Of a stretch of DNA of 64,000 nt, positions 6 through 23,123 are shown piece after piece. Positions within the stretch are counted from its first letter, which is position 1. Every line of letters begins with the position of its first letter. This DNA is from Saccostrea cucullata (Eukaryota). The notes under the pieces are model-generated. The model saw only the letters and a program-made list of their open reading frames with translations, had not been told where the DNA came from and did not search any database. The DNA is taken from positions 62,001 to 126,000 of the forward strand of contig NW_026930741.1 of the NCBI RefSeq assembly GCF_032062105.1, read 5' to 3'. Both the position numbers and the translations under genes were made by a program.

Positions 6-3000
6 AGAGTGATATGTCAGGATCAAAAGATTTTAATCGCCGTGGAACACAAAGGGATTGGGAGAAGCTGGAAGAAAGGTCAGGTGGTGATGGGCAGTCC
101 GAAATGGGACTGCACCCTTAACACGTTACCAGGGGGTTCGTCAAAACAGAGAGGGGTCTACGCCAAAATTAAGGAAATATTCTTCCCAACGGAAACCGGA
201 GTAGTCCTTCACACCCAGTCGGTTAGGTAAGGGTTCTTTATTCTGAAAAATAGAAAAAAAGGACATAATTTTAAATCTGAGAAATTGAAATATTAAACTT
301 TTTCAGAGCCTTCGATGTGATAGACGAAGCGGACATTAAGTTCCGCTATACTCCTGGAAACAGTGCATCTCATCCACCAGAAACGCGGAGAAGACATCGC
401 CGATACATCGCCAATGTACTGTCTGAACTCCTGGGAAACATCACGTGGCAGTACAGTGACACGACTTCTATTCCGTGGAATAAAGACGACTCTAGGGCGA
501 TTGGATCGTTTGGTTTAGCAATTGGAGAAAACGACACAGACTACCGTTATACTGAGAACGTAACAGATAGTGAAGTCATGAGCTTCGTCTGCGAGGACTG
601 CAGTGGAACATCCCACATGTCGTATGAATTGTAAGTGCCAAACTTGACAGTATCTAGCACGCTTGCAATGTACAAAACATGTATACATTTATGACAAATT
701 GTGTTAATTTTCCAGTGACTTAATCATAAAGAAGAATGCCATGAATGAACCAGAGATTCATCGCTACCTCAACAAGGTTTGTCATGATTTTATCTCAAAT
801 TTCTACTTTCATGCATGAAATTGTTAAAAGAGTAAATCAAAATTGTTTCATAATTGATTTGTTATAGCTTGAATCAAATACTACAATGAATTTGAAAACA
901 AGTTTCCAGACTTCAAAAGATATCAAGTTTGAGTTGCATAAAGAAATGGAAGAATTACGTGTTCCACCGACAATGCTGTTTTCGGTGCCTCTTGCGCATG
1001 TGCGAAATCTCCCGCCAGTGATGCTGACGGTGAAATATACGGGATCTACTTATGTTGACTTGCAAGTTGACACAAGATCAGCCGTTACTATGGAAACGGA
1101 CATTAAAGTTGGAGGAAAATATTCTTTTGGCAAGTCTGCTATAATTTCAAATTCTACTCATTTCGAATAATGGAAGTTATATTCTTAAAATATAAACCAT
1201 AAGAACAATCTTACATGTAATTAGAGTAAATTAAACATCCTTTTGTTCTTTTAGTTCATGAATACAGTGGAACTTCGTCTCTAGGAGGAGACGTTGTACC
1301 ACACAACTGGACGTCTACCACCGATCGCAATACTGTAAACAGCGACAAAGACATGTCCGTCAACATATCCGTGTATCAGCAGGTCGGGGCACATTTTTTT
1401 CTGTTAATCCACTCAGTAGATTTTTTAATACTTGATTCTGCTCATTCATGATTATAAGAGTATTTTCTTATTTTTTGACATTTTAGATTTTATTTAACAC
1501 AACAATTGGGTGGTTTGCTCGGGACATGGAGATTGATTTTTCACCTCCAATAAACTATAGGTAAAAAATAAATCTGCACTTCATTTATATACTCGGACAT
1601 TAACAAAAATGTATAAAAAAGTAATCTTTTTCTTGGATTTTTCTTTGAAAGATTGAAACCGACTATTCGCGGTAAATCTGCCGTTAATGACGTCCAGCGG
1701 TGCACCACGAAATCAGCCGACCTTGGTGGAGAGTTCAATGTTACAGAGGCCAGACTCACGGTGGAGGCCTTCGGAGTGTCGATATGGTATAACCCCGAAA
1801 AGGAGACACATCTAGTCTAACAATTTTAAATGAAATATTTTAAGATATATCATTTGTACATACCTTGATTAAAAATACACATGTAAAATACGTATTTTTT
1901 TATTCCTTTTTTAGGAATAGTCTAATTGCAAAGGGCTTCAATAAGAAAGTGAATTTTGAGAATGAAACTTTGTATCAGAAATGTTCCGCGGATTGTCCAA
2001 CATCAACAAAGATATCTTTATACGACGGACTAACAATGTCGGATGTTGTAGGAAATCCCAGAATGTCGATCAGGAGAAAAGATCCCGACTTCAGAATGTG
2101 AGTACGATGTGCAATACTTCCTAATCATTTTAAAATATATCAGTAGATCTCTAGCTTGTTGGTCTTAAGTAATTGGTATGGAGAACCAGAGAGCTACAGT
2201 GCCACCTGTTAATTACGCTCGATTCTGGATTTATTTCTCCAACTTACCTCAGCTTTACAAAAAGCTTAATTTCGGAAAATTCTTTAAACCTTTATTATCC
2301 ACTCTCGCAGCTGACATTTGCATGGAGCGCGTTGCACAGAGCTATCTTTCTATACAAATTGGCTGTATAAATAGGCGAAGTTTGTAGTCGTTTGAGATGG
2401 CGTTTTTTTTATTGGGTGGCATAGCGGCTCTCCAATCTGTTGATTTTTTTCATAGAGGTACAGTTCTGCATTCTAATAACTCCTTTCTGATTTCATTTTA
2501 TTTTCTAGTTTGACACAGATGTGGGGAGACAACGTCCTGTTTTCGTCTGAGGAGGCGAACTTTTCCTCCTGGTGCGGGACCCCTGGTCGTCCCTGCGGAA
2601 GTTGTGTTTATCAGGGCGCCGACGACATTGACCAGGAGTGTGCTGACCGTCTGATGGTTCCAAAACTAGCTACAAAAATCAGCCTTCTAGGGAAATATGT
2701 ATCTGCAGAATGGCCAGATAGTAAGTTTATTAAATACCTTTTTAAAACCGACTTGATACGATGTCAAAGATTACGCTCAGTATTTGATTACTTTTGCACA
2801 GTTAATATTGTACAAATCTATAAAGTTTACCAAAGCAATCTTTTTCCCTTTACAATTTGCCCATCATCCGTTTATATCCGACTCAGGTCATTGCTGTGAA
2901 ACTTATTTCAAAGCTTTATGCCATTTACAATTTTTATTTTCATTAATTTCAGAAAAACTGGTAGTTGTTGAAGCTTGGGATGAACCTACGTCGTCACATC

Positions 3001-6000
3001 CACACGGAAAACATGGCGATAAAAGCTTGTACTATGAGGGAAAAGCTGCTCAACTTGCTATAACTTACGCCAACAACAACTTTTCAGTTCCTCCGCCTGT
3101 TATTAAAGATGATAAAGATAATAAGCGCCTTGAACAAATGGCAGTATGCTCAGGCTTTCAATATGTGTCAAAGGTGAAACTAGAAGCAGGCATAGAGGTT
3201 GCAGTGGGTGATAAACAGACTCCATCAAGGGAAGTTAAGAGGACAAAGAAAGTTTCTCTTAGTGGCAAAGACGCGGCGGATAAAGAAGCCATGGTCAACG
3301 CAATGAAACGCCTTGGTTTGTAATTTATTCTGAAAATGATTACATGTATTTGTATTTGGCATATGATTTGTACTTATAATCCTTGCATTATCAATTTTAG
3401 AGTCTATATTGCCTGGAAAGAAGTGTCCTAAATTTGACGTGGTGAAGCTTGGACGTGGGGAATCTTTTCCTTCTAATTATCTTGGCGAGGTGGAGGCTGC
3501 CGTCGGCCCTGCTTTAGGACAAATTCATCGAGAGAACTCCGAGGAAATGAACAAGTAGGTTTCTCACAGAGAAACAAATAAAGGACAACTTATATCGTGA
3601 GTACTAAATTTAACTTTCTACCTTTGCTTTAGATTGTATGAATATCAGTTTGACGATTTCGAGTTCCTACATGAAAGACGAGAAAATCAAAGCAATGACC
3701 AATGTGGAACAATGAGAAAGTGCCAGGATGGAAGCTTTTCTAATGCAGACGACCCTTGGAGCTGGAGTGCCAATCGAGTTATGGCCCCAAGACTTGCATT
3801 TCGCATGAGAAGATTAGCCTTGATAGCAAAAGATGAGTTGCAGGGTGAGCATATGGTTGTGTCTTGACATTTCCTATTGTGAAAAAACAAAAAACAAAAT
3901 ATCACCAGCAATTTTATAACCTTATTAATGTATTGTAGGATTGAACGTCACCGTGGAGAGGGCATTTGCAGATAAAGTGGATCGAGGAGAGTCCGAACTG
4001 TTTCTTGAAGGAAGGCAAGTCATTTGAATGGTTTGCATTTAAGAAAGAGGGGAGAATTCTTTGACCAATAAAGGCATTGATGATTTCTATTTTTCAGGGG
4101 AGCACGACTAACAGTTAAAGAAAACCCTAATGTTAGCATTCCTATTCTTGGGCATGCTGCGATATGTGCTGGTTTTGATTTTGTTCGCAATATCGATAAT
4201 GCAGCAATAGAGGTATTTGTAAAACTACAGGATGGGTTTAGAACCACTCTGATTCCTTATCCCAGTGGTGACGTGCTTATTGCCGTTGCTCCCCCTTCAT
4301 CAGAGGAAGATGAGTATTCCTACAGTGCAGAATTTGACCACGAGAATAAGAAACCTCTCTTAGTAGATGGTGCAAGAGAAGAGATAAAACTGTCCAAACA
4401 TTTCAAATTAGCTGATTTTAAATTTGAAGGTCATCGTTTCCTGCGCATTGACCCCTCTCTCGTCGAATGTTTAGATCTGACACAGCAGGACTTTAGAGGA
4501 AAAATACAAGTTCTCACTGGATATAGACCAAAATCTGCTAACGAACAAGAGGTTGGATGGAGTAGGCGACAATTAGCTAGATTCCAGATGGGTCAAGCAG
4601 CTGAAATAATGTCGAGCAGTGAGGATGAAGTCCTATCCTTGGCTAAAATGTTGATGGTTACGTGCACCCCGTTCCTCCGTCTTCAGCGAAGAGGACTAGG
4701 TATCCATGTAAAGCAAAATGAAGAAATCGGACGAATTAGCATCTATGTTGATCTTTATCCTCTCCGTGACGATAATAGAGTTATTGATTTGAAGATAAAA
4801 TGTCCGGTTAACAAAGAAACAGAGTGCATGTGGAACGAGCTTAAGTTGTACTGGTCAGAAATAACGAAGGGTGGTCCAGGTATCATACCATATGATGTCA
4901 AGAGTGCGTGTAAAAAGCCTGACCTCAAAAAGAAAACTTATCTCAACTTTAATCTGAACAGACCAGGGTAATATTTATTGAAAATAAATGGATATTAATA
5001 AAAAAAAATTAAACTAACATTTGTCTGGAGTAGCTATATACCAGATAGATAGAAATTCATTGATATTTGTTGATCGGTACTTTTAATTTCATTTCTTGCA
5101 GATTCTGCTTACAATTCCATGATATTAAGTTCTGCCAGAACTCTACCAAGGCCCGAAAAGAACTCGCGGAGGATCTCCTGAAACAATTACAGAGTGTGGC
5201 GGGAACTGATCGGCTGGACATAGCAACAACTCGAGAACAGATTAGACAGTGTATCGTCACTGGCTGTGGGGGATGTTCAGGATCGGGTAAAGAAACAATA
5301 AAGAAGTATCTGTCAGTTATTATCGCGACTCCGAACATGTGTTAAGGTGTTATTAACTAATATATACTTAAGAAACATTCGATTAAATTACAGAAGAACA
5401 AGGGAGAAATATATCAGTAATCTATCTTTTCAGTGAAAATCATGAAGCATTTTTTTCATTCAAGTTTGCTAAATTCAAAAACTGAACTTTTAAAACCATT
5501 AAAACATTAAAATTTGAAAAGAAAAAAACATTGAAAATGAAAACATAGGTTGCTTTTCGATATCAAAGAGTCCTTAAACTTTTAATGATGTTGGAAATTC
5601 TCTGTTTTGAGGAACTACTCTGCTACCTATATCTTAGTCTTTATTAACTAACTTTAGGAAAGAAGTGGGATGGGAAGGTAAGAGCATGTTCAGAACTCGT
5701 GGATAACTTTATGAAGCATGCAAGTATACCACTGATCAAGCCGACAGAGAGCATGTCCTTTTTTAACCCGGATAATGTTGACTCAGCTGCACATGCGTAT
5801 GCCTGTAAGAAAGATGGAACCAAATGTCAAGAGACCGTACAACTATACTCGATATTCCGTAAGTTGGCATTGGAACGAGTTAACACTTCTAGCAACTTAT
5901 CATTACTTCTTATTTTTAATTCATTTTATCCTCCAGGGCACTTGATCCCACCTCTGATTTTTCGGAGATCCGTGTTTGCTCTGCTCCTATTTTGTATTGT

Positions 6001-6688
6001 GTTATGGATTTTGAGATTGAATACTGTTCGTTATCTCCATATCCTTCATCCAACTCATGTTTACATTTACATTTATTTTTCATTTAAAAGAAACTTTACT
6101 TGCGAAAACCTACAAACCGAATCCTAACACGAGTATCGAGGAGGAGGTATTTGGTGCCACAGACAATCCTAGCCCTCTTCTACAGATCGTGGAACAGGAG
6201 ATCGCCATGAATGTCTCGGGAAATGTGTCAGTTGTAATAGACCGCTACAAAGATATTTCTGCTCTTCGGAGTGTTCTCAAGGTAACAGTCTGGTCCTGAG
6301 AGATATCTAACCGTATTTTTGTCCATATCATAACGTATTTTAAGAATTTCATACGATAGAAATTTTAAAAAAAGTGTTTGTTTGGATGCAAATAATCTAT
6401 ATTTCAATTATGAAGGTTTTGATGATCCACAACCGGAAAGTCAATTTTGTAAACTTCCACGTTATGCACGGCGTGAATCCTGACAAGATCGTGACCACTC
6501 TACAACGGAAGCTGGAGACTTGGTCTGGTTTGTCCTGTCCCAAATGGAGCAGGTTCGCCGCGGCTCCTTTCACTATTGAGATTGTATCCAAGGAAAGAAA
6601 GAAAAGAAGTATTGAGGACAGCAGGCAGCGGAACGAGGCTCGGAAACGAAAACGAGACTGGGAACGGGACTGGATATTGCAAACTTAG
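6..6688 (+). CDS. 5'-incomplete multi-exon gene: beta-rich N-terminal region, two Hedge-like domains, peptidase M15A-like domain, Cys-rich C-terminus (uncharacterised Hedgehog/DD-peptidase fold protein)
   Basis: Approximate exons joined by eye: 6-226, 307-630, 716-776, 867-~1130, 1255-1382, 1488-1560, 1652-~1787, 1915-~2097, 2509-2720, 2953-~3315, 3401-3554, 3633-3844, 3939-4014, 4098-4967, 5102-~5286, 5658-5858, 6091-6281, ~6416-6688 (TAG). AATAAA at 6711. Hh-like motifs FSSEE..CADRLM..WPD/KLVVVEAWDE..SLYYEGKA and AGFDFV..IEVFVK. Start codon lies upstream of the window. Confidence 0.85.
2020..3210 (+). other. Hedge-like domain 1 (spliced over three exons)
   Basis: SIRRKDPDFRILTQMWGDNVLFSSEE...CADRLMVPKLATKISLLGKYVSAEWPD..KLVVVEAWDEP..HGDKSLYYEGKAAQL...AVCSGFQYV...IEVAV aligns by eye to Shh [79 protein letters not shown]...AVEAGFDWV...IHCSV. 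Confidence 0.85.
3455..4235 (+). other. Hedge-like domain 2 (more diverged)
   Basis: GESFPSNYLGEVEAAVGPALGQIHREN...SANRVMAPRLAFRMRRLA...LNVTVERAF...SELFLEGRGARL...AICAGFDFVRNIDNAAIEVFVK keeps the same motif order as the Hh-N domain. Confidence 0.75.
4385..4760 (+). other. Peptidase M15A-like (D-Ala-D-Ala carboxypeptidase fold) domain, predicted inactive
   Basis: LSKHFKLADF..IDPSLVECLDLTQQDFRGKIQVLTGYRPKSAN..RFQMGQAAEI..GLGIH..IYVDL matches the M15A pattern LS.hF...EF..ID..L...L..lR...g.pi.i.SGYR...N..S.H..G.AaDi..GiG.Y..fvHvD, with H>F, D>E and H>Y at the metal ligands. Confidence 0.75.
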
Positions 6689-6710: not shown

Positions 6711-6716
6711 AATAAA
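6711..6716 (+). promoter_or_regulatory. Polyadenylation signal of gene 1
   Basis: AATAAA ~22 nt after the stop codon, followed by a T-rich stretch. Confidence 0.6.
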
Positions 6717-8744: not shown

Positions 8745-11700
8745 TAATATTTATATCTATCGTGTAATATATTTTTATAGGCACCTCCAACGTATGGTGG
8801 TGGTTGGGAAGGGGTTGTTGTCTGATTTTATTAAAAAGAGAATAGATTATTATTTTATTTTACTTACAAATTAACAAAACCCCCACAAAATTGAAATTTA
8901 AAACAGATTCCAGTGAGCATTTTAATATTTATTTTGTCTTACTTTTGATAATGTTACACTTATTAGCTTGAACATTGTAATAATTTTTCAGATTTGCAAG
9001 ACACTGTAATCAAAATTGGCTCTGAGGCTCCATCATAAGGCCGAGTTGTTAGGTTCTGTATTAGGATGCTACTTTGTACATGTATTCTAGGGGTATCAAA
9101 GAGAGGAAGTTACCTTATGCGTAGAATAAATACAGCACTTTTAAAATGTCTCGCACCGAATTTCCCTATTTGATACGAGTTTCTTCGGTACTTCTGGTAA
9201 CATGTGTTGCTGAACCCTCTTTCTTTCTACGTCGTAAAATTAATTTTCTATATAATTGAAGCGTCCTCTTACTGCACATGAATGCAATGAAAATAAATAC
9301 ACCTTGTAGACTGTTAATTGCGCCAACCACATCGGAGAACCCCGAATCTTCTAGAAAGCCGTCCAGAATCTGTAACAACCATGTTGCTCCGGTTATTGTG
9401 AGTAAGCGCGCAAATATGGAGAACTCATTTGTCGTTGCTTTATTCTTGCGGACTTTGGGGGATCGAATTATTGTGGACAAGGTTTTGATAAAGAAAATTA
9501 AGTTCACTGTACACAGCAACCCAACAGGAAGGAGGAAAGATACGATCAAGTGTAGGCTTTCATCTATAAAGCATTTTACTTTTCCGTATCCGATATCATT
9601 ATGTTTTGCCACCGACACTGCTATGTTGCTTGAAACAACCACCATCGGGGTAACAAAGATATAAACTGAATATTTACCCAAGATGCACCATTTGTTAGCT
9701 TGGTTGTGCAGAGCAAATTTTGAGTGGAATACTCGATACAAATGAAAGCTACATATGTTCATAGAAAAGAATGAACTAAGCCACAGGTAGTGGGTAATTA
9801 TTCCATATACAAAACATCCCTTAGTATTGACCTCATTACCTTTGCGTATAAGGATGAAAACGTCTGTCGCGAACAAAACAGCAATAAGAATCATAATAGT
9901 TCCTCCTGGCAATGTCCGGAGCTCCTGGAAGATACAGTAGGTGCAAAACGTAATCAATAGAAAAATACAGGACAGCGTCTGGAAGGCAAATTCTATAGTG
10001 GAATCCTGTGAAATCTCCTTCAGAGTAGATTTGTAAGTCGTTCTTGTGTCATCATAAATCTGACGCAACGTAGAGACACATACTCTTGCTGGGCCTTCGG
10101 GCAAAATATCAAAATCGTCATCCTCTAAAGTTATGTTGTACATTTTTAGAAGAATATTGTTATTCTCTCCAGTTTTATAAATTTCAAATTCTTGTGGACT
10201 AAACTCTATTTGAGCGCAAACTAAAAGCTTGCTCACTCGAACTTCACGATATTTAGCCCAATCATAAGAAGTATTGACGTAGCTAAAGGAACAAGACCAG
10301 TTAGATTCGGGGGAAGGTACATTTGAAATCATGATGAAACCGGGAATGCTGAAATTGTGCTTGATATACAAGAGATCTAATTCTGTTTGAAGTCTCTGGA
10401 CTGGATTTTCAAAAAATAATTTGAAACTCAAATGCAATTGAAAATAATTTTCCAGAAGAGTTTCTCTATTACAAGGTAAATTAATGTCCGTTATCAGTTC
10501 TCTCACAGAATTTTGTCCAAAGAGAGATTGCAATTTAGAGAATGTAAATCGATGAATATGTGTCAAGATATCCCCAATAGAAGTGTTAAACTGAGTAGAG
10601 CAGTTGAAATAGGCATCCATACGGTACCGGAGATTTCGTGCTTCTCTAAATAGTGGCAAACAAGACTGACCAAGATTCAGAGTTTTTCCAGGATAACATG
10701 TGACGTTTCTGCAGCCTCCCTAAAACAGAAAATGTATAGGCTTTAACAAAATCATTTGGGAATAAAGTATAGTACAAGAACTTGTATATAAGTAAAGCAA
10801 AAGATTGACTTTTGAAACAAACTACAGAAATGCAAATACCATCAATGAGTTTTGTGCTTCCCTACATTGACGTTCACTGGCTTCTTCGGGGCTGTAATTG
10901 TCGTTCGGATATTTATATAAATAATTTAAGGATTTCATAACAGGTCTGAACGGTGAGAAATAATATCGCAAAAGAAAGTCTTTTCTCTCGGATACTTCTG
11001 GGTGTTCGGATCCGTAGCAAATTTTGCTAGAGTCTGTTTTAATTTTCAGAGATTCATTTGTACAAATTTCACAAAAGGTATTCTTGTAAGGATATGTAAA
11101 ATAGATTTTGGGGGAAAAGTTGCACTTTTTAAGGCTGATTTCACTGACTCCAGAGGAACAGTTGTCAACAAAGGCATCAGACCATTCCAGGGGATTGCAT
11201 AACGCACAATAAACATTTTTATAAGCTGTCAGTTGACCATTGTCATTCTCGTGCCACAAAGGCAAGGAACCAGGTGGCATCAATTCACATGCCCAGAGAA
11301 TATCCGGATCTTTATGTGGCCAGTTTCCTGTTTTGTTACATTTGTCTATTATGTTGTCAGATTTCCGGAAACACGTTTTACCCTTGCTATTTTGACAAGA
11401 AGTCACTGAACGAGGAGGGTGATAATATGATTCACATCCTGCAGCTTGTAATGCATTTAGAAAATCCAAAAAAAGTAAGAAATTGGACATGTCTATATAG
11501 AAGGAACAATCTGCTGTGATGTCCCATGGTTTGTGCCATACTAGTTTGGTTGATGGAAACTGGTTGCATTGTAAACAATACATATTTAGATACGGGATAT
11601 CAGATTGATCTGTGACAGGGTGCATTGAAAAAACATCTTCAAATTGTTGATGACATCCTCTTACAATAAATTCTGGTATTTCTTTTCTTCCATAGCACCC

Positions 11701-14700
11701 ACTTGTAACCAGAAGTTCTTCTGCGTTCCGTTGTGCCTCTTTCCTCGATAATTTCTTTTCACTCAGACAAACCGAGGGATTTCTTAGAGGGACATCAGCA
11801 CAACACCTCTGAGATCCGTAAAGACCATCAGTAAAAATGCATTTTGGGTCACATGAACAATCACTTTCGAAAGAAGAAAACAGGTTTGGAATACCATAGT
11901 TTCCACAAGTGTTCATGTTACCTTCTAGAGAAATTCTTTTGAATACAAGGTTTGTTATGTTTGGAGACTGGGTAACTGCATCTTTTGTGGTTTCGTTAGA
12001 CCTCTCCTTAAAATCCGCTTGCTCACCATTGATTTTAGTTTGGAAGAAGTCCTCATCAAAGTTAAAAATGTTTATTTCATAATGAAAGGTTGTAGATACT
12101 TCGGTATTTGTAATATCACCAATTTTTGTCTTTATTTCTGCGTCGACATCAAGAAAATTTGACTTGAATCGTACAGGTTTATTGCATGAAAAACAGAATA
12201 CATTTTTATACGGAATTGAACCCGGGTTAGTGTCATTGCTTAGACATGCTCCTTCATGTGTTGGATCGTATTCATCCCACTTACCTGTGACATTACATCG
12301 ACCAATCACATTCTCTGTATAGATAGGAGGGTTGCAGATTTTGCAGAACATGTTTTTATACATCTTGTCCTTATTGATATACCTTGATTCGCAACCTCTT
12401 TTAATATCGTAGTCAAATGTTTTCCAGCTTCCGGTTTTATTGCAAGAGTCAAAGTGCACTTGTACTTGCATATCTTGTGTACACTTGTAGTTGATCTCTT
12501 CTTGCGGAGGATATGACAATATGTTACACCGATTCATTTTCCCCTTTTCTATCAATTCTTCGTACGAAGAAAAGAAGTTTATGTCTAAGAACTCGTCACA
12601 GACAATACTTAATGGCCAGGGATCGTACTGGAAATCATTATTGCAGTCAGCACAGTAACGGTTAAGGTACGCCAGGGGGGTGTTCTGACTGGTCACAGGA
12701 GGAAAGAGAATTTTCTCGGTAGAACTCGAATCACCTTCACATTTCCGTTTTGTCTCTTCGACTGTAGTTTTGGGACAGGAATCGACCACAAGAAAGGTAG
12801 AACTTCCGTCGTAGTATAATGATTCATTTAGAATGGCAGCAGATGTGCAGATAGGCTCTGGATAGGAGAAGTACAAATCCGGACAACAGTTGCAATCTGA
12901 CCAGCATTTTTTTTGACAGGAACATGGCGGACAGTTGTGCTGGATATTATCAGCTTGTGTTGTCCATGGAAAGAGAAAATCATGCATAAAGCAAAAGTGA
13001 CTTCGGCCACACAACGTAAAGTATTGCTGAAGAAGGTTCCTGATATTCCAGTCTGATGATGCACCCACTTTAAAGGTTGAAAGTAAAATTATGAACATAA
13101 TTGAAATATTGTAGTCCATGTTGATTGAATGCTAGCAGCTAATATTTTCAGTGAAACTCCGTGAATCTCTTTATTTATAAATATTTTTTTCAAATTGCCT
13201 TACAATTTACAAAGTGTTTCTTATGTTTCTTTTTCAATGGAGTCTTTATTAACTATGAATAAACAAGTGAAGAAGAAAAAGAACGTAAATTGTCTATTAA
13301 ATTGCGTTTTTCCTGTGTATTAATCGTGTGATTATTCAGGCAGCTATACTTTATTTTATAAACAAAGACTTTAGTATTTTTAATATTTAAAAGACCCGAT
13401 ATATATATGGTTAATGTATGAAGGTTTCTTTTTTAAAACTTGTATGAAATATTGACATTTTTGCGAATTTAACTTCAATTTTTGTTTATTGTCCTTTTAA
13501 AAATTCTTTAAGGAGATTGCATGGTTAATAAATTAGCCACTGCATTGACCTGGTTCTTTAACTATTAAGTATTTAAAAGCATGCAAATTTTTCTTCAAAA
13601 TAAATAAAATATAGGAAGACTAAAAATTATTAATCAATTTATAAGTAGAAATATTTAATATTAATTGATTGATTTTATAGTGTTTTTACCTGCCTTTCGA
13701 AAATTTGTTTCACTCATATAGAGGAATACGGGTTAAGGGCTTCATTAAGACCTATATAAGGCAGTCAGTGCCATTGAACAGTTAACAAAGGAAAGCTTAC
13801 TACCTATGTTAACGTCATAGGTTTGACGCGGTGCGGCCGAAGGCAGTCCGAGCACGGGTCTCCTGATCATGAAGGAGTCATTTGGTTAGTTCAGAGGTTT
13901 TTTATTCTATCTTTAATGGCTGGATAACCGACCGATCATATAGAGAAGGGTTTCCTCTCTAAACCCTCCTCCCGCCGCCCGAACATGTGTTCTAGTGTAG
14001 GATTCCTCTTACGCAAAACTTACTCTAAGATGTTCCTAAAGATATCAAACAATGAGTAAAATTATCCTAGTGAGTGGTTCTTCCTATATCCCAAGTAATT
14101 AAAAAAATGGTAGCTATGTTTAGATCAAACTGAGGGGGTTCGTATTAGCTTTACAAAAAGGTTTATTTTCGTATAGCTTAAAGAACTTTGCTTTGTGTAT
14201 TTTAATTTTTCATGCTGATATATATTTATCTATATTTCAGTATCTTGCAGTATGTTTGATTGATTAAATATACCCTTTAATTGAGGTCTTTGAACAGTAC
14301 GTCAAAGATAAAGGAATTTGTGTTTCTTTCAGATTTACTAATCAGGTTTGGCATCCCTCTGTTTTTAGATTTTTTTTCTATTTGCTTGATTTACAGTTTT
14401 CCAATAAGGAGACATATCATTATATGTTTGCTTTTATCTAATTTCTGAGTGTCACAAGGGCCACAATCTTTCAAAAAGATTGTGACACAAAAAGGTACGA
14501 TAATCGATACCTACAAACAATGTTATCAAAGTAGGTTGACATCTCTTTGGTGTTGGAGCCGAAACATTGACTCGGACGAAGAACTTCCTCCTTCGCCCAA
14601 AAATATAATCCCTTAGCAACCTACGAACTTATGCGAGATAGTGTGAAATCAAGGAAGATATCTTCTGGCCATGATGGCGACGTGTTCGTTTTTGCTTTAC

Positions 14701-19169: not shown

Positions 19170-22100
19170 GTACTGGATTTGATGAGCGTTTTATCGGTAC
19201 TTTTGGTAACATGCGTTGTGGAACCTTTTTTTCCGACGTCGTAAAATTAATTTTTGATATAATTGAAGCGTTCTCCTACTGCACATGAATGCAATGAAAA
19301 TAGATACACCTTGTAGACTGTTAATTGCGCTAACTACAGGGGAGAACGTCGAATCTTCTAGAAAGCCGGCCAGAATCTGTAACAACCATGTTGCTCCGGT
19401 TATTGTGAGTAAGCGTGCAAATATGGAGAACTCATTTGTCTTTGCTTTATTCTTGCGGACTTTGGGAGATCGAATTATTGTGCACAAGGTTTTAATAAAG
19501 AAAACTAAGTTCTCTATACACAGCAGCCCAACAGGAATGAGCTATACACAGCAGCCCAACAGGAATGAGGAAAAATGCTATCAGGTACAGGCTTTCATCT
19601 ATAAAGCATTTTACTTTTCCGTATCCGATATAGCTTTGTTTTGCCATCGTCACTGCTATGTTGCTTAAAACCACCACCAGTGGAGTAACAAAGATATGAG
19701 TAGAATATTTACCTAAGATACACCATTTGTTAGTTTGGTTGACCAGAGCAACTTTTGAGTGAAAAACCCGATACAAATGAAAGCTACATATGTTCATAGA
19801 GAAGAATGAGGTCAGCCACAGGTAGTGGGTAATTATGCTGTAAACTACACATCCTGTAGTATTGATCTCCCTCCCGCTACCAGTAAGGATGAAAACGTCT
19901 GTCGTGAGCAAAACGGCAATGAGAATCATAATAGTTCCTCCTGGCAATGTCCGAAGCTCCTGGAATATACAGTAGGTGCAAAACGTATTAAAAAGAAAAA
20001 TTCTGGATAAAGTCAGTAAGGTAAAGTCTGTGATGGAATACTGTGAGATTTTCTTCAAATTAGGTTTGTAAGTCGTTCTTGTGTCATCGTGAATCTGACG
20101 CAACATAGAGACACATACTCGTGCAGTGCCTTCGGGCAAAATGTCAAAATCATCAGCATCTAAAGTCATGTTGTTCATTTTTAGAAGCATATAAGTATTT
20201 TTTTCAGTTTCATAAATTTCCAATTCTTGTGGATTAAACTCAATTTGAGTGCAAACTAAAATGTTGCTAACTCGAACTTCAGTCCAAGCGTAAGATCCAT
20301 CATCATAGTTAAAGGAACAAGACCAGTTAGATTCATCGGAAGGAACATTTGAAATCAGGGTAAATCCAGGAATGCTAAAGTTGTATTTGATATTCAAGAG
20401 ATTTAATTCTCTTTAAGTCTCTGGACTGGATTTTCAAAAAATAATTTGAAACTCAAATGCAATTGAAAATAATTCTCCAGAAAAATTCCTTGTTTACAAG
20501 GTATATCAATGTTCGTTATTAGTTCTCTCACAGATCTTTATCCAAAAAGAGATTGCAGTTTGGAAAATGTAAATCGGTGAATATGTGTCAAAATATCCCC
20601 TAAAGAAGCGTTATACTGAGTAGAGCAGTTGAAATAGGCATCCAAGTTGTACCGGAGATTTCGTGCTTCTCTAAATAGTGGCACACAAGATTTACCTAAA
20701 TTCAAAGTTTTTCCCGGGATAACATGTGACGTTTCTGCAGCCTCCCAAAAAACAGAAAATGTAAACGCTTTCATGATAAATTTAGAAACAAATTATTGCA
20801 CCCGTGCATAAACAAAGCAAAAATTGACTGTTGAGATAGAATACAGAAATACAAATATCATCATTGAGTAAAAGTTCTGTGCTTCCGTACATTGACCATC
20901 ACTGGCTGCTCCAGAGCTGAAATTGTCACTCGGATATTTATATAATATTTTAAGGATTTCACGACAAGTCTTGACGGTGAGAAGTCTTATTCTATAAGTG
21001 GTTCGAGGATTGGATCTGTGGATTCTTTGCGATAGCAAACTTCGTGAAAGTGTCTTCTAGGAGGTCCATATGTGCAAAATTTACAAAAGATATTCTTGTA
21101 AGGATATAGAAAATAAATTTGGGGGGAAAAGTTGCACATCTTTACGTGGATTTTACTGGAATGATACAAACATCTATCTACAAAGGTATCAGACCATTCT
21201 TGGGGGCTATATAACGCACAATAAACATTTTTATACTTTTTCGTTTGACCATTGACATTTTCGTGCCACAAAGGTAAGGAACCAGGTGGTATCAATTCAC
21301 ATGCCCAGATAATATCCGGATCTTTATGTGGCCAGTTTCCTGTTTTATTACATTTGTCTATTATGTTGTCAGATTTCCGGAAACACGTTTTACTTTTGCT
21401 ATTTTGACAAGAAGTCACTGAACGAGGAGGGTGATAGTATGTATCACAGCCTGCAGCTCGTAATGCTTTTAGAAAATCCGAAAAAAGTAGAAAATTTGTT
21501 TTGTCTATATAAACAGAGCAATTCGCTTTAATATCCCATGGTTTGTGTCTTGCTACTTTCGTTGATGAAGACTGTTTGCATAGTAAACAATACATATTCA
21601 GATACGGAATATCAGTTGATGGATCCGTGACAGGGTGCATTGAAAAAATATCTTCAAATTGTTGATGACATCCTCTTACAATAAATTCTGGAAATTCTTT
21701 ACTTCCATAGAACCGGCTTGTAACCAGAAGTTCTTCTGCGTTCCTTTGTGCGTCTTTCCTCGATTATTTGTTTTCACTCAGGCAAACTGAAGGGTAGTTC
21801 AGAGCAACATCAGCACAACAGCTCTGAGACCTGGAAAGACCATCAGTAAAATGCATTTTGGGTCACAAGAACAATAACTTTCGAATGAAGACAACGAAAA
21901 CAGGCTTGGAATGCTAGACTTTCCATAGGTGTTTACGTTTCCTTCTAGAGAAATCATTTTAGATAAAAGGTTACTTATGTTTCGAGACTGGGTAACTGCA
22001 TCTCTCGCGGTTTTGTTAGTCCCATTGCTCACCAGTGATTTTAGTTAAAAAGAAGTCCTCATCAAAATCACAATACTAATGTCAGAATAAAAAGTTGTAG

Positions 22101-23123
22101 TCCTTCCGGTATCTTTAATATCATCAATTTTTGTCTTAATTTCCGCGCTGACATCAAGAAAATTGGAATTGAATTGTGATGGTTTATTGCACGATAAACA
22201 AAATACATTTTTGTACGGAAGTGAACCTTGGTTGGCGTCATTATTTAGACATGCTCTCTCCTGTGTTGGATTATAGTCATCATACATACCTGTGACATTA
22301 CATCGACCAATCACATTCTCTGTATAGATAGGAGGGTTGCAGATTTTACAGAACATGTTTTTATACATCTTGTCATTATTGATATACCTTGATTCGCAGC
22401 TTCGTTTTATATGGGAGTCAAATATTTTCCAGCTTCCGGTTTTATTACAAGAGTCAAAGTACACTTTTTCTTGCATACCTTGTGTACAATTGTAGTTGAT
22501 CTTTTCTTGCGGAGGATATGACAATATGATACATCGATTCTTTTTCCCTTTTTCAATCAATTCATCATAGGAAGAAAAGAAGTTGATGTCTAAGAACTCA
22601 TCACAGACAATATTCAAAGGCCAGGGATCGTAACTGAATTCAAAATTGCAGTCAGTGCAGTAACGGTTTAGGTAGGCCAGGGAGGAGGTTTGCCTGGTCA
22701 CTGGAGGATAGAGAATTTTCTCAATGGAACTCAAATCCCCTTCACATTTCCGTTTTGTTTCCTCGACTGTATTTTTCGGGCAGGAATCGATCATAAGAAA
22801 TGTTGAACTTTCTTTAATGTCTAATGATCTATTAAGAATGGCAGCAGATGTGCAGAATGGCTCTGGATGAGAGAAAATATAAATCCGGGCAACAGTTGCG
22901 ATCTGACCAGCATTTCTTTTGACAGGAACATGGCGGACCGCTATGCGTGATATCATCAGCTTGTGTTGTCCAAGGAAAGATAAAATCATGCATAAAGCAA
23001 AAGTGACTTGGGCCTTACAACGTAAAGTACTGCTGAAGAAGGTTTCCGATATTCCAGTCCGAATACCAATTCTTTAGAGGTTGAAATTAAAATGAGAAAC
23101 AAAACTGAAATATTGTGTTCCAT
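19170..23123 (-). pseudogene. Pseudogenised paralogue of the 9166-13119 GPCR
   Basis: Collinear with the intact gene from ATG at 23123 but broken into at least 7 ORF fragments. Donor GT changed to AT (~20858), acceptor AG lost (~20747), 28-bp frameshifting duplication at ~19514-19569, and several 1-bp indels. Confidence 0.85.

What the first reader, a model, noticed from the sequence alone, without database searches (positions are those of the whole stretch)
2020..4760. Hint-less protein with tandem Hedge domains fused to an M15A peptidase domain
Seen: two internal Hedge domains directly followed by an M15A-like domain, with no CF-initiated Hint/Hog domain, VWA or cadherin in the visible part. 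Established: canonical Hh is one Hedge plus Hint, and Hedgling is Hedge-VWA-cadherin-TM. Inference: this is a different architecture that joins Hedge to its bacterial structural relative in one chain, relevant to the origin of Hedgehog.
Basis: partly seen in the sequence, partly recalled or inferred. Interest (0 to 1): 0.82.

Follow-up and report, generated by a model that had tools for sequence, protein, structure and literature searches.

The report
Long oyster Hedglet with CD38-like tail
An expressed oyster gene encodes a large secreted protein built from probably inactive enzyme folds (two Hedgehog-signal-like domains, a bacterial cell-wall-peptidase-like domain and a previously unnoticed CD38-like domain); it is a longer, mollusc form of the barely studied 'Hedglet' family and is more likely an extracellular binding protein than a missing link in Hedgehog evolution.

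Summary
Observation confirmed. The region is the middle of one spliced gene (19 exons, 1432 aa by phase arithmetic; RNA contigs join the Hedge and M15A exons). Layout: signal peptide, ~470-aa beta-sheet module, Hedge1, Hedge2, M15A-like domain, C-terminal domain; no Hint, VWA, cadherin or membrane anchor. All three peptidase-type domains lack their zinc ligands; Hedge1 keeps most calcium-site residues. New here: the C-terminal domain models as a CD38/ADP-ribosyl-cyclase fold (Foldseek E 9e-6; VIA Z 11-12), apparently without the catalytic Glu. The same long form occurs in bivalves, gastropods and cephalopods. A shorter form (M15A-Hedge-M15A-CD38-like) occurs in molluscs, an annelid, echinoderms, hemichordates, amphioxus and a sponge, and includes a protein that Jagers and Roelink (2021) named a 'Hedglet' from its Hedge segment alone. 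So the family is named but uncharacterised; the tandem form, the CD38-like domain and the sponge member were not found in the papers searched. The scan had already described the short paralog elsewhere in this genome (s1-716462). Trees cannot tell whether these Hedge domains came from Hh, so the 'origin of Hedgehog' claim is unproven. Most likely a secreted pseudo-enzyme binding scaffold, perhaps for bacterial wall material.

The parts
6..1786 (+). Exons 2-8 (6-226, 307-630, 716-776, 868-1129 GC donor, 1255-1382, 1487-1560, 1652-1786): N-terminal all-beta module (~aa 20-490). Exon 1 with Met and signal-peptide-like stretch lies upstream of the window (L005:9478-9651).
   Evidence: phases; family N-terminal profile hits; joints from 868 on in RNA; model of orthologue all beta, pLDDT 80; nearest predicted folds bacterial DUF8402/8403 and fungal DUF7029/7223 proteins, TM about 0.5; no clear PDB match
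1988..3212 (+). Hedge domain 1 (exons 1915-2097, 2509-2720, 2953-3315) with a four-Cys insert; Zn ligands replaced (His>Tyr, Asp>Gln, His>Glu, catalytic Glu>Val); five of six calcium-site residues kept
3213..3450 (+). Basic linker between the Hedge domains (furin-type sites at this place in many orthologues)
3451..4233 (+). Hedge domain 2 (exons 3401-3554, 3633-3844, 3939-4014 GC donor, start of 4098-4967); Zn ligands lost
4387..4770 (+). M15A-like (D-Ala-D-Ala peptidase fold) domain; substrate Arg kept, ligands His/Asp/His read Phe/Glu/Tyr
4855..5120 (+). Cys-rich connector (end of exon 4098-4967, start of exon 5102-5286)
5121..6628 (+). CD38/ADP-ribosyl-cyclase-fold domain (exons 5102-5286, 5658-5858, 6091-6281, 6416-); catalytic Glu and the two active-site Trp apparently not kept
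   Evidence: orthologue model pLDDT 91; Foldseek and VIA; motif columns
6596..6688 (+). Conserved RKKR|S furin-type site followed by a ~26-residue conserved C-terminal peptide and stop; AATAAA at 6711

Best explanation
A secreted, soluble, glycosylated ~1430-aa protein made of catalytically dead enzyme folds that works by binding rather than cutting. Shown: one spliced, transcribed gene; the domain order; loss of the zinc ligands in Hedge1, Hedge2 and the M15A-like domain; retention of most calcium-site residues in Hedge1; a CD38-like fold at the C-terminus; no membrane anchor; conservation across Mollusca and of a shorter form from sponge to amphioxus. Inferred: signal peptide cleavage and furin trimming; loss of NAD-cleaving activity (no acidic residue in the helix that carries CD38 Glu226, read from motif correspondence, not from a residue-level superposition). 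Most likely role (inferred): an extracellular matrix, mucus or haemolymph scaffold whose peptidoglycan-hydrolase-derived clefts bind bacterial wall fragments or glycans, like non-catalytic PGRPs, in marine invertebrates that live on or among bacteria. The long form arose in molluscs from the short Hedglet by swapping the first M15A domain for a beta module and adding a second Hedge.
For: RNA joints; collinear full-length homologues; ligand tables; calcium site; fold searches; C-terminal motif columns against Aplysia cyclase segments, the genome's own CD38-like exons with an intact Glu motif and the catalytic residues named in PMC2785692; no hydrophobic stretch except the N-terminus; taxa; five family members kept in this genome. 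Closest relatives of the M15A-like domain are bacterial wall peptidases, some fused to lysozyme or glucosaminidase.
Against: No binding, localisation or expression-site data exist; no paper on any member beyond the naming. Dead folds can be reused for any protein-protein contact. The substrate-side residues were not modelled with a ligand. Structures are of a freshwater mussel orthologue (35-52% identical per exon), not of the window protein. Signal peptide judged by hydrophobicity only.
Confidence: 0.5

Rival explanations
1. A Hedgehog-pathway modulator or ligand-like factor: Hedge1 keeps the calcium surface that Hh uses to bind CDO/BOC, Ptch and Hhip, and furin sites could release Hedge-bearing fragments or the conserved C-terminal peptide as signals.
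For: Five of six calcium-site residues kept in Hedge1; furin-type sites between the Hedge domains and before the C-terminal peptide in many members; the genome has a canonical hh.
Against: No N-terminal Cys after the signal peptide, no Hint, so no lipid modification; Hedge is internal and carries a four-Cys insert inside the calcium loop; 30-45% identity to Hh core only; family present in a sponge, where canonical Hh is absent (PMC8052667).
Confidence: 0.2
2. The C-terminal domain is a working NAD+ glycohydrolase or nucleotide-binding enzyme with a rearranged active site, and the peptidase-like domains target it to bacteria or matrix (a secreted antimicrobial or signalling enzyme).
For: Whole CD38 fold kept, both lobes (185-213 residues aligned); the Glu of the CD38 signature loop is kept in 28 of 38 members and the Asn-Pro before the Trp helix in all; three short members have Glu next to the catalytic position.
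Against: Window protein has Leu/Lys at the catalytic-Glu position and no Trp at either active-site Trp position; the candidate substitute Glu is not kept in the short form.
Confidence: 0.15
3. A structural component of secreted matrix (shell, periostracum, mucus, cuticle) whose folds serve only as stable disulfide-rich building blocks.
For: Secreted, Cys-rich, about 19 N-glycosylation sequons, all catalytic sites degenerate, gene expansion in oysters.
Against: No repeats or low-complexity tracts typical of matrix proteins; no proteome paper cites the member ids searched; present in soft-bodied amphioxus and hemichordates.
Confidence: 0.15

Closest known systems
Hedglets (Jagers and Roelink 2021, PMC8052667)
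   Same: Hint-less, catalytically degenerate Hedge domain in molluscs, echinoderms and amphioxus; their example XP_002607850.1 falls in a cluster I retrieved with the window's exon; shared M15A-like and C-terminal domains and four-Cys Hedge insert.
   Different: All Hedglets they list have a single Hedge at about residue 300-410 (short form). The window gene is the long mollusc form with two Hedges, one M15A-like domain and a 470-aa beta module. The paper described no architecture, no M15A-like or CD38-like domain, and no sponge member.
Hedgehog (Hh/Shh)
   Same: Full-length Hedge fold with calcium-site residues; secreted.
   Different: No Hint/SRR, no N-terminal Cys, zinc site lost, two internal copies, 1430 aa.
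Hedgling
   Same: Hint-less Hedge with degenerate zinc site in a large extracellular protein.
   Different: No VWA-cadherin-EGF-TM chain; soluble; different taxa. (One ark-clam model, P0095, has a VWA inserted in Hedge2.)
Bacterial M15A peptidases (Pfam Peptidase_M15_3; 1lbu) and bacterial Hh-like proteins
   Same: Fold and sequence relationship.
   Different: Bacterial ones keep His/Asp/His; none of 26 bacterial Hh-like ORFs carries a second, separate M15A domain within the fetched stretch.
CD38/CD157/Aplysia ADP-ribosyl cyclase
   Same: Both lobes of the fold (Z 11-12, about 200 residues).
   Different: 10-14% identity, no Pfam Rib_hydrolayse hit, different disulfides, catalytic Glu and active-site Trp apparently absent, fused at the end of a multidomain secreted protein.

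Membership tests
Hedgehog | N-terminal Hedge domain directly after the signal peptide | tested here: not met
   Hedge1 starts at about aa 485
Hedgehog | C-terminal Hint/Hog autoprocessing domain | tested here: not met
   No Hint in window exons or full-length homologues; gene ends at 6688 with RNA support
Hedgehog | His-x6-Asp ... His zinc site and catalytic Glu | tested here: not met
   Tyr/Gln/Glu and Val in Hedge1
Hedgling | Hedge-VWA-cadherin repeats-transmembrane | tested here: not met
Hedglet (Jagers and Roelink 2021) | Hint-less Hedge domain lacking catalytic residues, in lophotrochozoans/basal deuterostomes | tested here: met
Hedglet (Jagers and Roelink 2021) | Homology to the listed Hedglet proteins beyond the Hedge segment | tested here: met
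   P0098 = XP_002607850.1; window exons 15, 18, 19 and family profiles hit the short form (E to 1e-52)
Hedglet (Jagers and Roelink 2021) | Single Hedge at about aa 300-410 as in all listed examples | tested here: not met
   Two Hedges and a different N-terminus; separate paralogue class. The paper does not state this as a rule, so the gene is filed as a variant.
Peptidase M15A | LAS/DD-peptidase fold | tested here: met
   VIA Z 9.6 to 1lbu; bacterial-only profile E 7e-18
Peptidase M15A | His-x6-Asp and His-x-Asp zinc ligands | tested here: not met
   Phe/Glu/Tyr
Peptidase M15A | Peptidoglycan peptidase activity | not testable with these tools
   needs assay
CD38/ADP-ribosyl cyclase | Two-lobed cyclase fold | tested here: met
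   (orthologue model)
CD38/ADP-ribosyl cyclase | Sequence membership (Pfam PF02267 / PDB sequence match) | tested here: not met
CD38/ADP-ribosyl cyclase | Catalytic Glu226, Trp125, Trp189 | tested here: inconclusive
   Motif reading says absent; profile alignments with single short exons were too weak and the fold tools give no residue-level pairing

The most novel reading that the evidence does not exclude
Hedglets are a third ancient animal Hedge lineage, older than Hh (present in a sponge), built wholly from bacterial-type wall-peptidase and NADase folds that were switched off and reused as a secreted microbe-sensing or nucleotide-binding receptor; the mollusc tandem form is an elaborated version, and the CD38-like domain is the first such (pseudo)cyclase fused to Hedge.
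Probability: 0.3. Interest if true: 0.8.

Novelty: new variant of a known kind. Interest (0 to 1): 0.6.

Why it matters
It gives the first full anatomy of an 'enigmatic' Hedge-bearing family that has a name but no description, adds an unrecognised branch of the CD38 fold in animals, and shows the Hedge domain in a non-signalling, peptidoglycan-enzyme context. A sponge member, if genuine, undercuts the published guess that Hedglets derive from Hh. It makes a direct test possible: does a metal-less Hedge/M15A module bind bacterial wall, or Hedgehog receptors?

Tried and rejected
Separate genes: rejected by RNA joints and collinear homologues. A guessed 35-bp exon at 5937-5971 was rejected (breaks phase; RNA skips it; it lies in a common repeat). 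Pfam scan of window exons found only a sub-cut-off HH_signal hit and no M15_3; PDB sequence searches with the exon or family profiles found nothing. Word search with the sponge Hedge found nothing. Profile comparison with single CD38-like exons was too weak. ESM Atlas features gave no hit for the C-terminal domain. Catalytic-residue migration to the Ser193 position was considered and dropped (not kept in the short form). Bacterial precedent for a Hedge+M15A fusion not found in 26 loci (two ORFs run off the fetched stretch). Trees of the 94-column Hedge core could not root the family (one mis-cut M15A row and two long rows removed in 117; no Hedgling rows). N-terminal module has no clear solved fold.
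Full report
The locus. The window is animal DNA with short introns; a paralogue in the same genome is 100% identical over 220 aa to a protein annotated in Saccostrea cucullata, so it is almost certainly this oyster. The finding covers the middle of one gene. Reading AG/GT boundaries and checking phases exon by exon gives 19 exons, two with GC donors, no internal stop, 1432 codons. Exon 1 lies just upstream of the window (L005:9478-9651) and opens with a hydrophobic, signal-peptide-like stretch, the only such stretch in the protein. RNA contigs from four studies show the predicted joints between 1129 and 6416 (the 5286-5658 joint by loose ends), skip a small exon I had guessed at 5937, and single contigs run from 868 to 4967 across both Hedge regions and the M15A exon. 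One contig has 847 further letters upstream of exon 5, which fits 780 coding letters of exons 1-4 plus a short leader.

Domains. The exon at 2953-3315 hits HH_signal weakly. The big search with exon 4098-4967 (used because the word search gave only fragments) returned ~1400-aa proteins from abalone, freshwater mussel, mud snail, argonaut, scallop and oysters, which carry two HH_signal stretches and to which 15 window exons map in order. It also returned bacterial proteins with Peptidase_M15_3. A profile of those bacterial domains alone finds the window exon at E 7e-18, and the AlphaFold model of the mussel orthologue's last 539 residues (pLDDT 91) matches the M15A-type DD-peptidase 1lbu better than ShhN (Z 9.6 vs 6.6).

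All three are metal-less. In 35 Hh and bacterial Hh-like sequences the four zinc/catalytic positions read His, Asp, Glu, His without exception; window Hedge1 reads Tyr, Gln, Val, Glu, and no family copy has the full set. The M15A-like domain reads Phe, Glu, Tyr where all bacterial relatives have His, Asp, His, and keeps only the substrate Arg. Hedge1 keeps five of the six calcium-site acidic residues and has a four-Cys insert in the calcium loop, a signature shared down to the sponge member.

The unexpected part. The last ~260 residues model as the CD38/ADP-ribosyl-cyclase fold: Foldseek E 9e-6, all top rows CD38; in the Foldseek-independent search the top three of 48,161 chains are CD38, Aplysia cyclase and CD157 (Z 11.3, 11.2, 10.3), then 1lbu, then a CD38-like bacterial NADase domain; about 200 residues over both lobes align. 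Sequence identity is 10-14% and Pfam sees nothing. Reading motifs against tool-printed Aplysia segments, this genome's own ordinary CD38-like genes and the catalytic residues in PMC2785692: the signature-loop Glu (28 of 38), the Asn-Pro and the Ala-x-Gly-x-Val strand entry are kept, but both active-site Trp are gone and the catalytic-Glu helix has Leu/Lys. This mapping is an inference; I could not get a residue-level superposition. The N-terminal ~470 residues model as a long beta-sheet module with no clear PDB match and TM about 0.5 to bacterial secreted DUF8402/8403 and fungal DUF7029/7223 proteins; in this genome it occurs only in the four long-form genes. A furin-type site before a conserved ~26-residue C-terminal peptide is kept in nearly all members.

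The family. A shorter form of 915-960 aa (signal peptide, M15A-like, Hedge, M15A-like, CD38-like) occurs in oysters, limpets, mussels, the annelid Owenia, starfish, a crinoid, two hemichordates and amphioxus, and, behind trypsin and PLAT domains, in a transcript of the sponge Oscarella. This genome has four long genes and one short. No vertebrate or arthropod name appeared among the named hits, but not all hits could be named, so absence is not shown. Jagers and Roelink (PMC8052667) named 'Hedglets' in molluscs, echinoderms and amphioxus, called their distribution enigmatic, noted loss of catalytic residues and guessed they derive from Hh; their list includes XP_002607850.1, which is P0098 here, and only short-form proteins. 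Only that paper and its preprint use the term.

Origin of Hedgehog. Hh groups with bacterial Hh-like proteins and the family copies sit on long branches outside, Hedge1, Hedge2 and the short-form Hedge each clustering, but a tree forcing Hh and the family together is not rejected (AU p 0.77). The data thus neither place this protein on the line to Hh nor confirm derivation from Hh; the single sponge sequence is the best hint that the family is older than Hh, and needs genomic confirmation. The tandem form itself is a mollusc innovation and says little about origins.

How it most likely works. A secreted soluble protein in which four enzyme folds have all lost their chemistry is best read as a binding scaffold. 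Since the nearest intact relatives of three of them act on peptidoglycan, and the hosts are marine invertebrates, I favour binding of bacterial wall or glycan in mucus, matrix or haemolymph (0.5), ahead of an Hh-pathway modulator through the kept calcium surface (0.2), an active NAD enzyme (0.15) or a purely structural protein (0.15). None of these steps has experimental support.

Verdict. Real, expressed, conserved; a new variant (long, tandem-Hedge) of a named but uncharacterised family, with a new and well-supported CD38-like domain.

Noticed in passing
P0063 / P0131; L019:1475-4186, L020:10001-12808 (ENA metagenome contigs of ERZ26858995): Intronless gene on gene-sparse, eukaryote-like contigs encoding signal peptide + M15A domain with intact His/Asp/His + LDLa + Hint: a Hedgehog-like layout with a plain, apparently active M15A in place of Hedge. 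Organism unknown; arguably more relevant to Hedgehog's origin than the window gene.
   Followed up: partly
P0057; L021:746-2062: Phage-type lysozyme fused to an intact M15A domain that is among the closest relatives of the animal M15A-like domains; source organism unknown.
   Followed up: partly
P0095 (Tegillarca granosa) aa 729-890; P0030, P0094: VWA domain inserted inside Hedge2 in the ark-clam gene model; other oyster paralogues have a ~300-aa unassigned insert at the same place.
   Followed up: partly
P0039 (Oscarella pearsei): Sponge member with trypsin and PLAT domains ahead of the short Hedglet core; its Hedge keeps the first His and the Asp.
   Followed up: partly
G000 C14548, C14078, C20375, C14000; C13871: Four more family genes in this genome, and two ordinary CD38-like genes in opposite orientation on C13871.
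   Followed up: partly
window 9166-13119 (-): Secretin/adhesion-type GPCR with a long Cys-rich ectodomain, tail to tail with the gene; similar large ORFs at 19492-22989. No evidence of functional linkage tested.
   Followed up: no
   Followed up: no
L005:1378-7849 (+): Upstream neighbour looks like an NSRP1/CCDC55-type splicing regulator gene (from memory of the family), with a ~180-bp tandem repeat element in two introns.
   Followed up: no
window 5860-6050: Common repeat in intron 17, seen at very high depth in RNA contigs.
   Followed up: no
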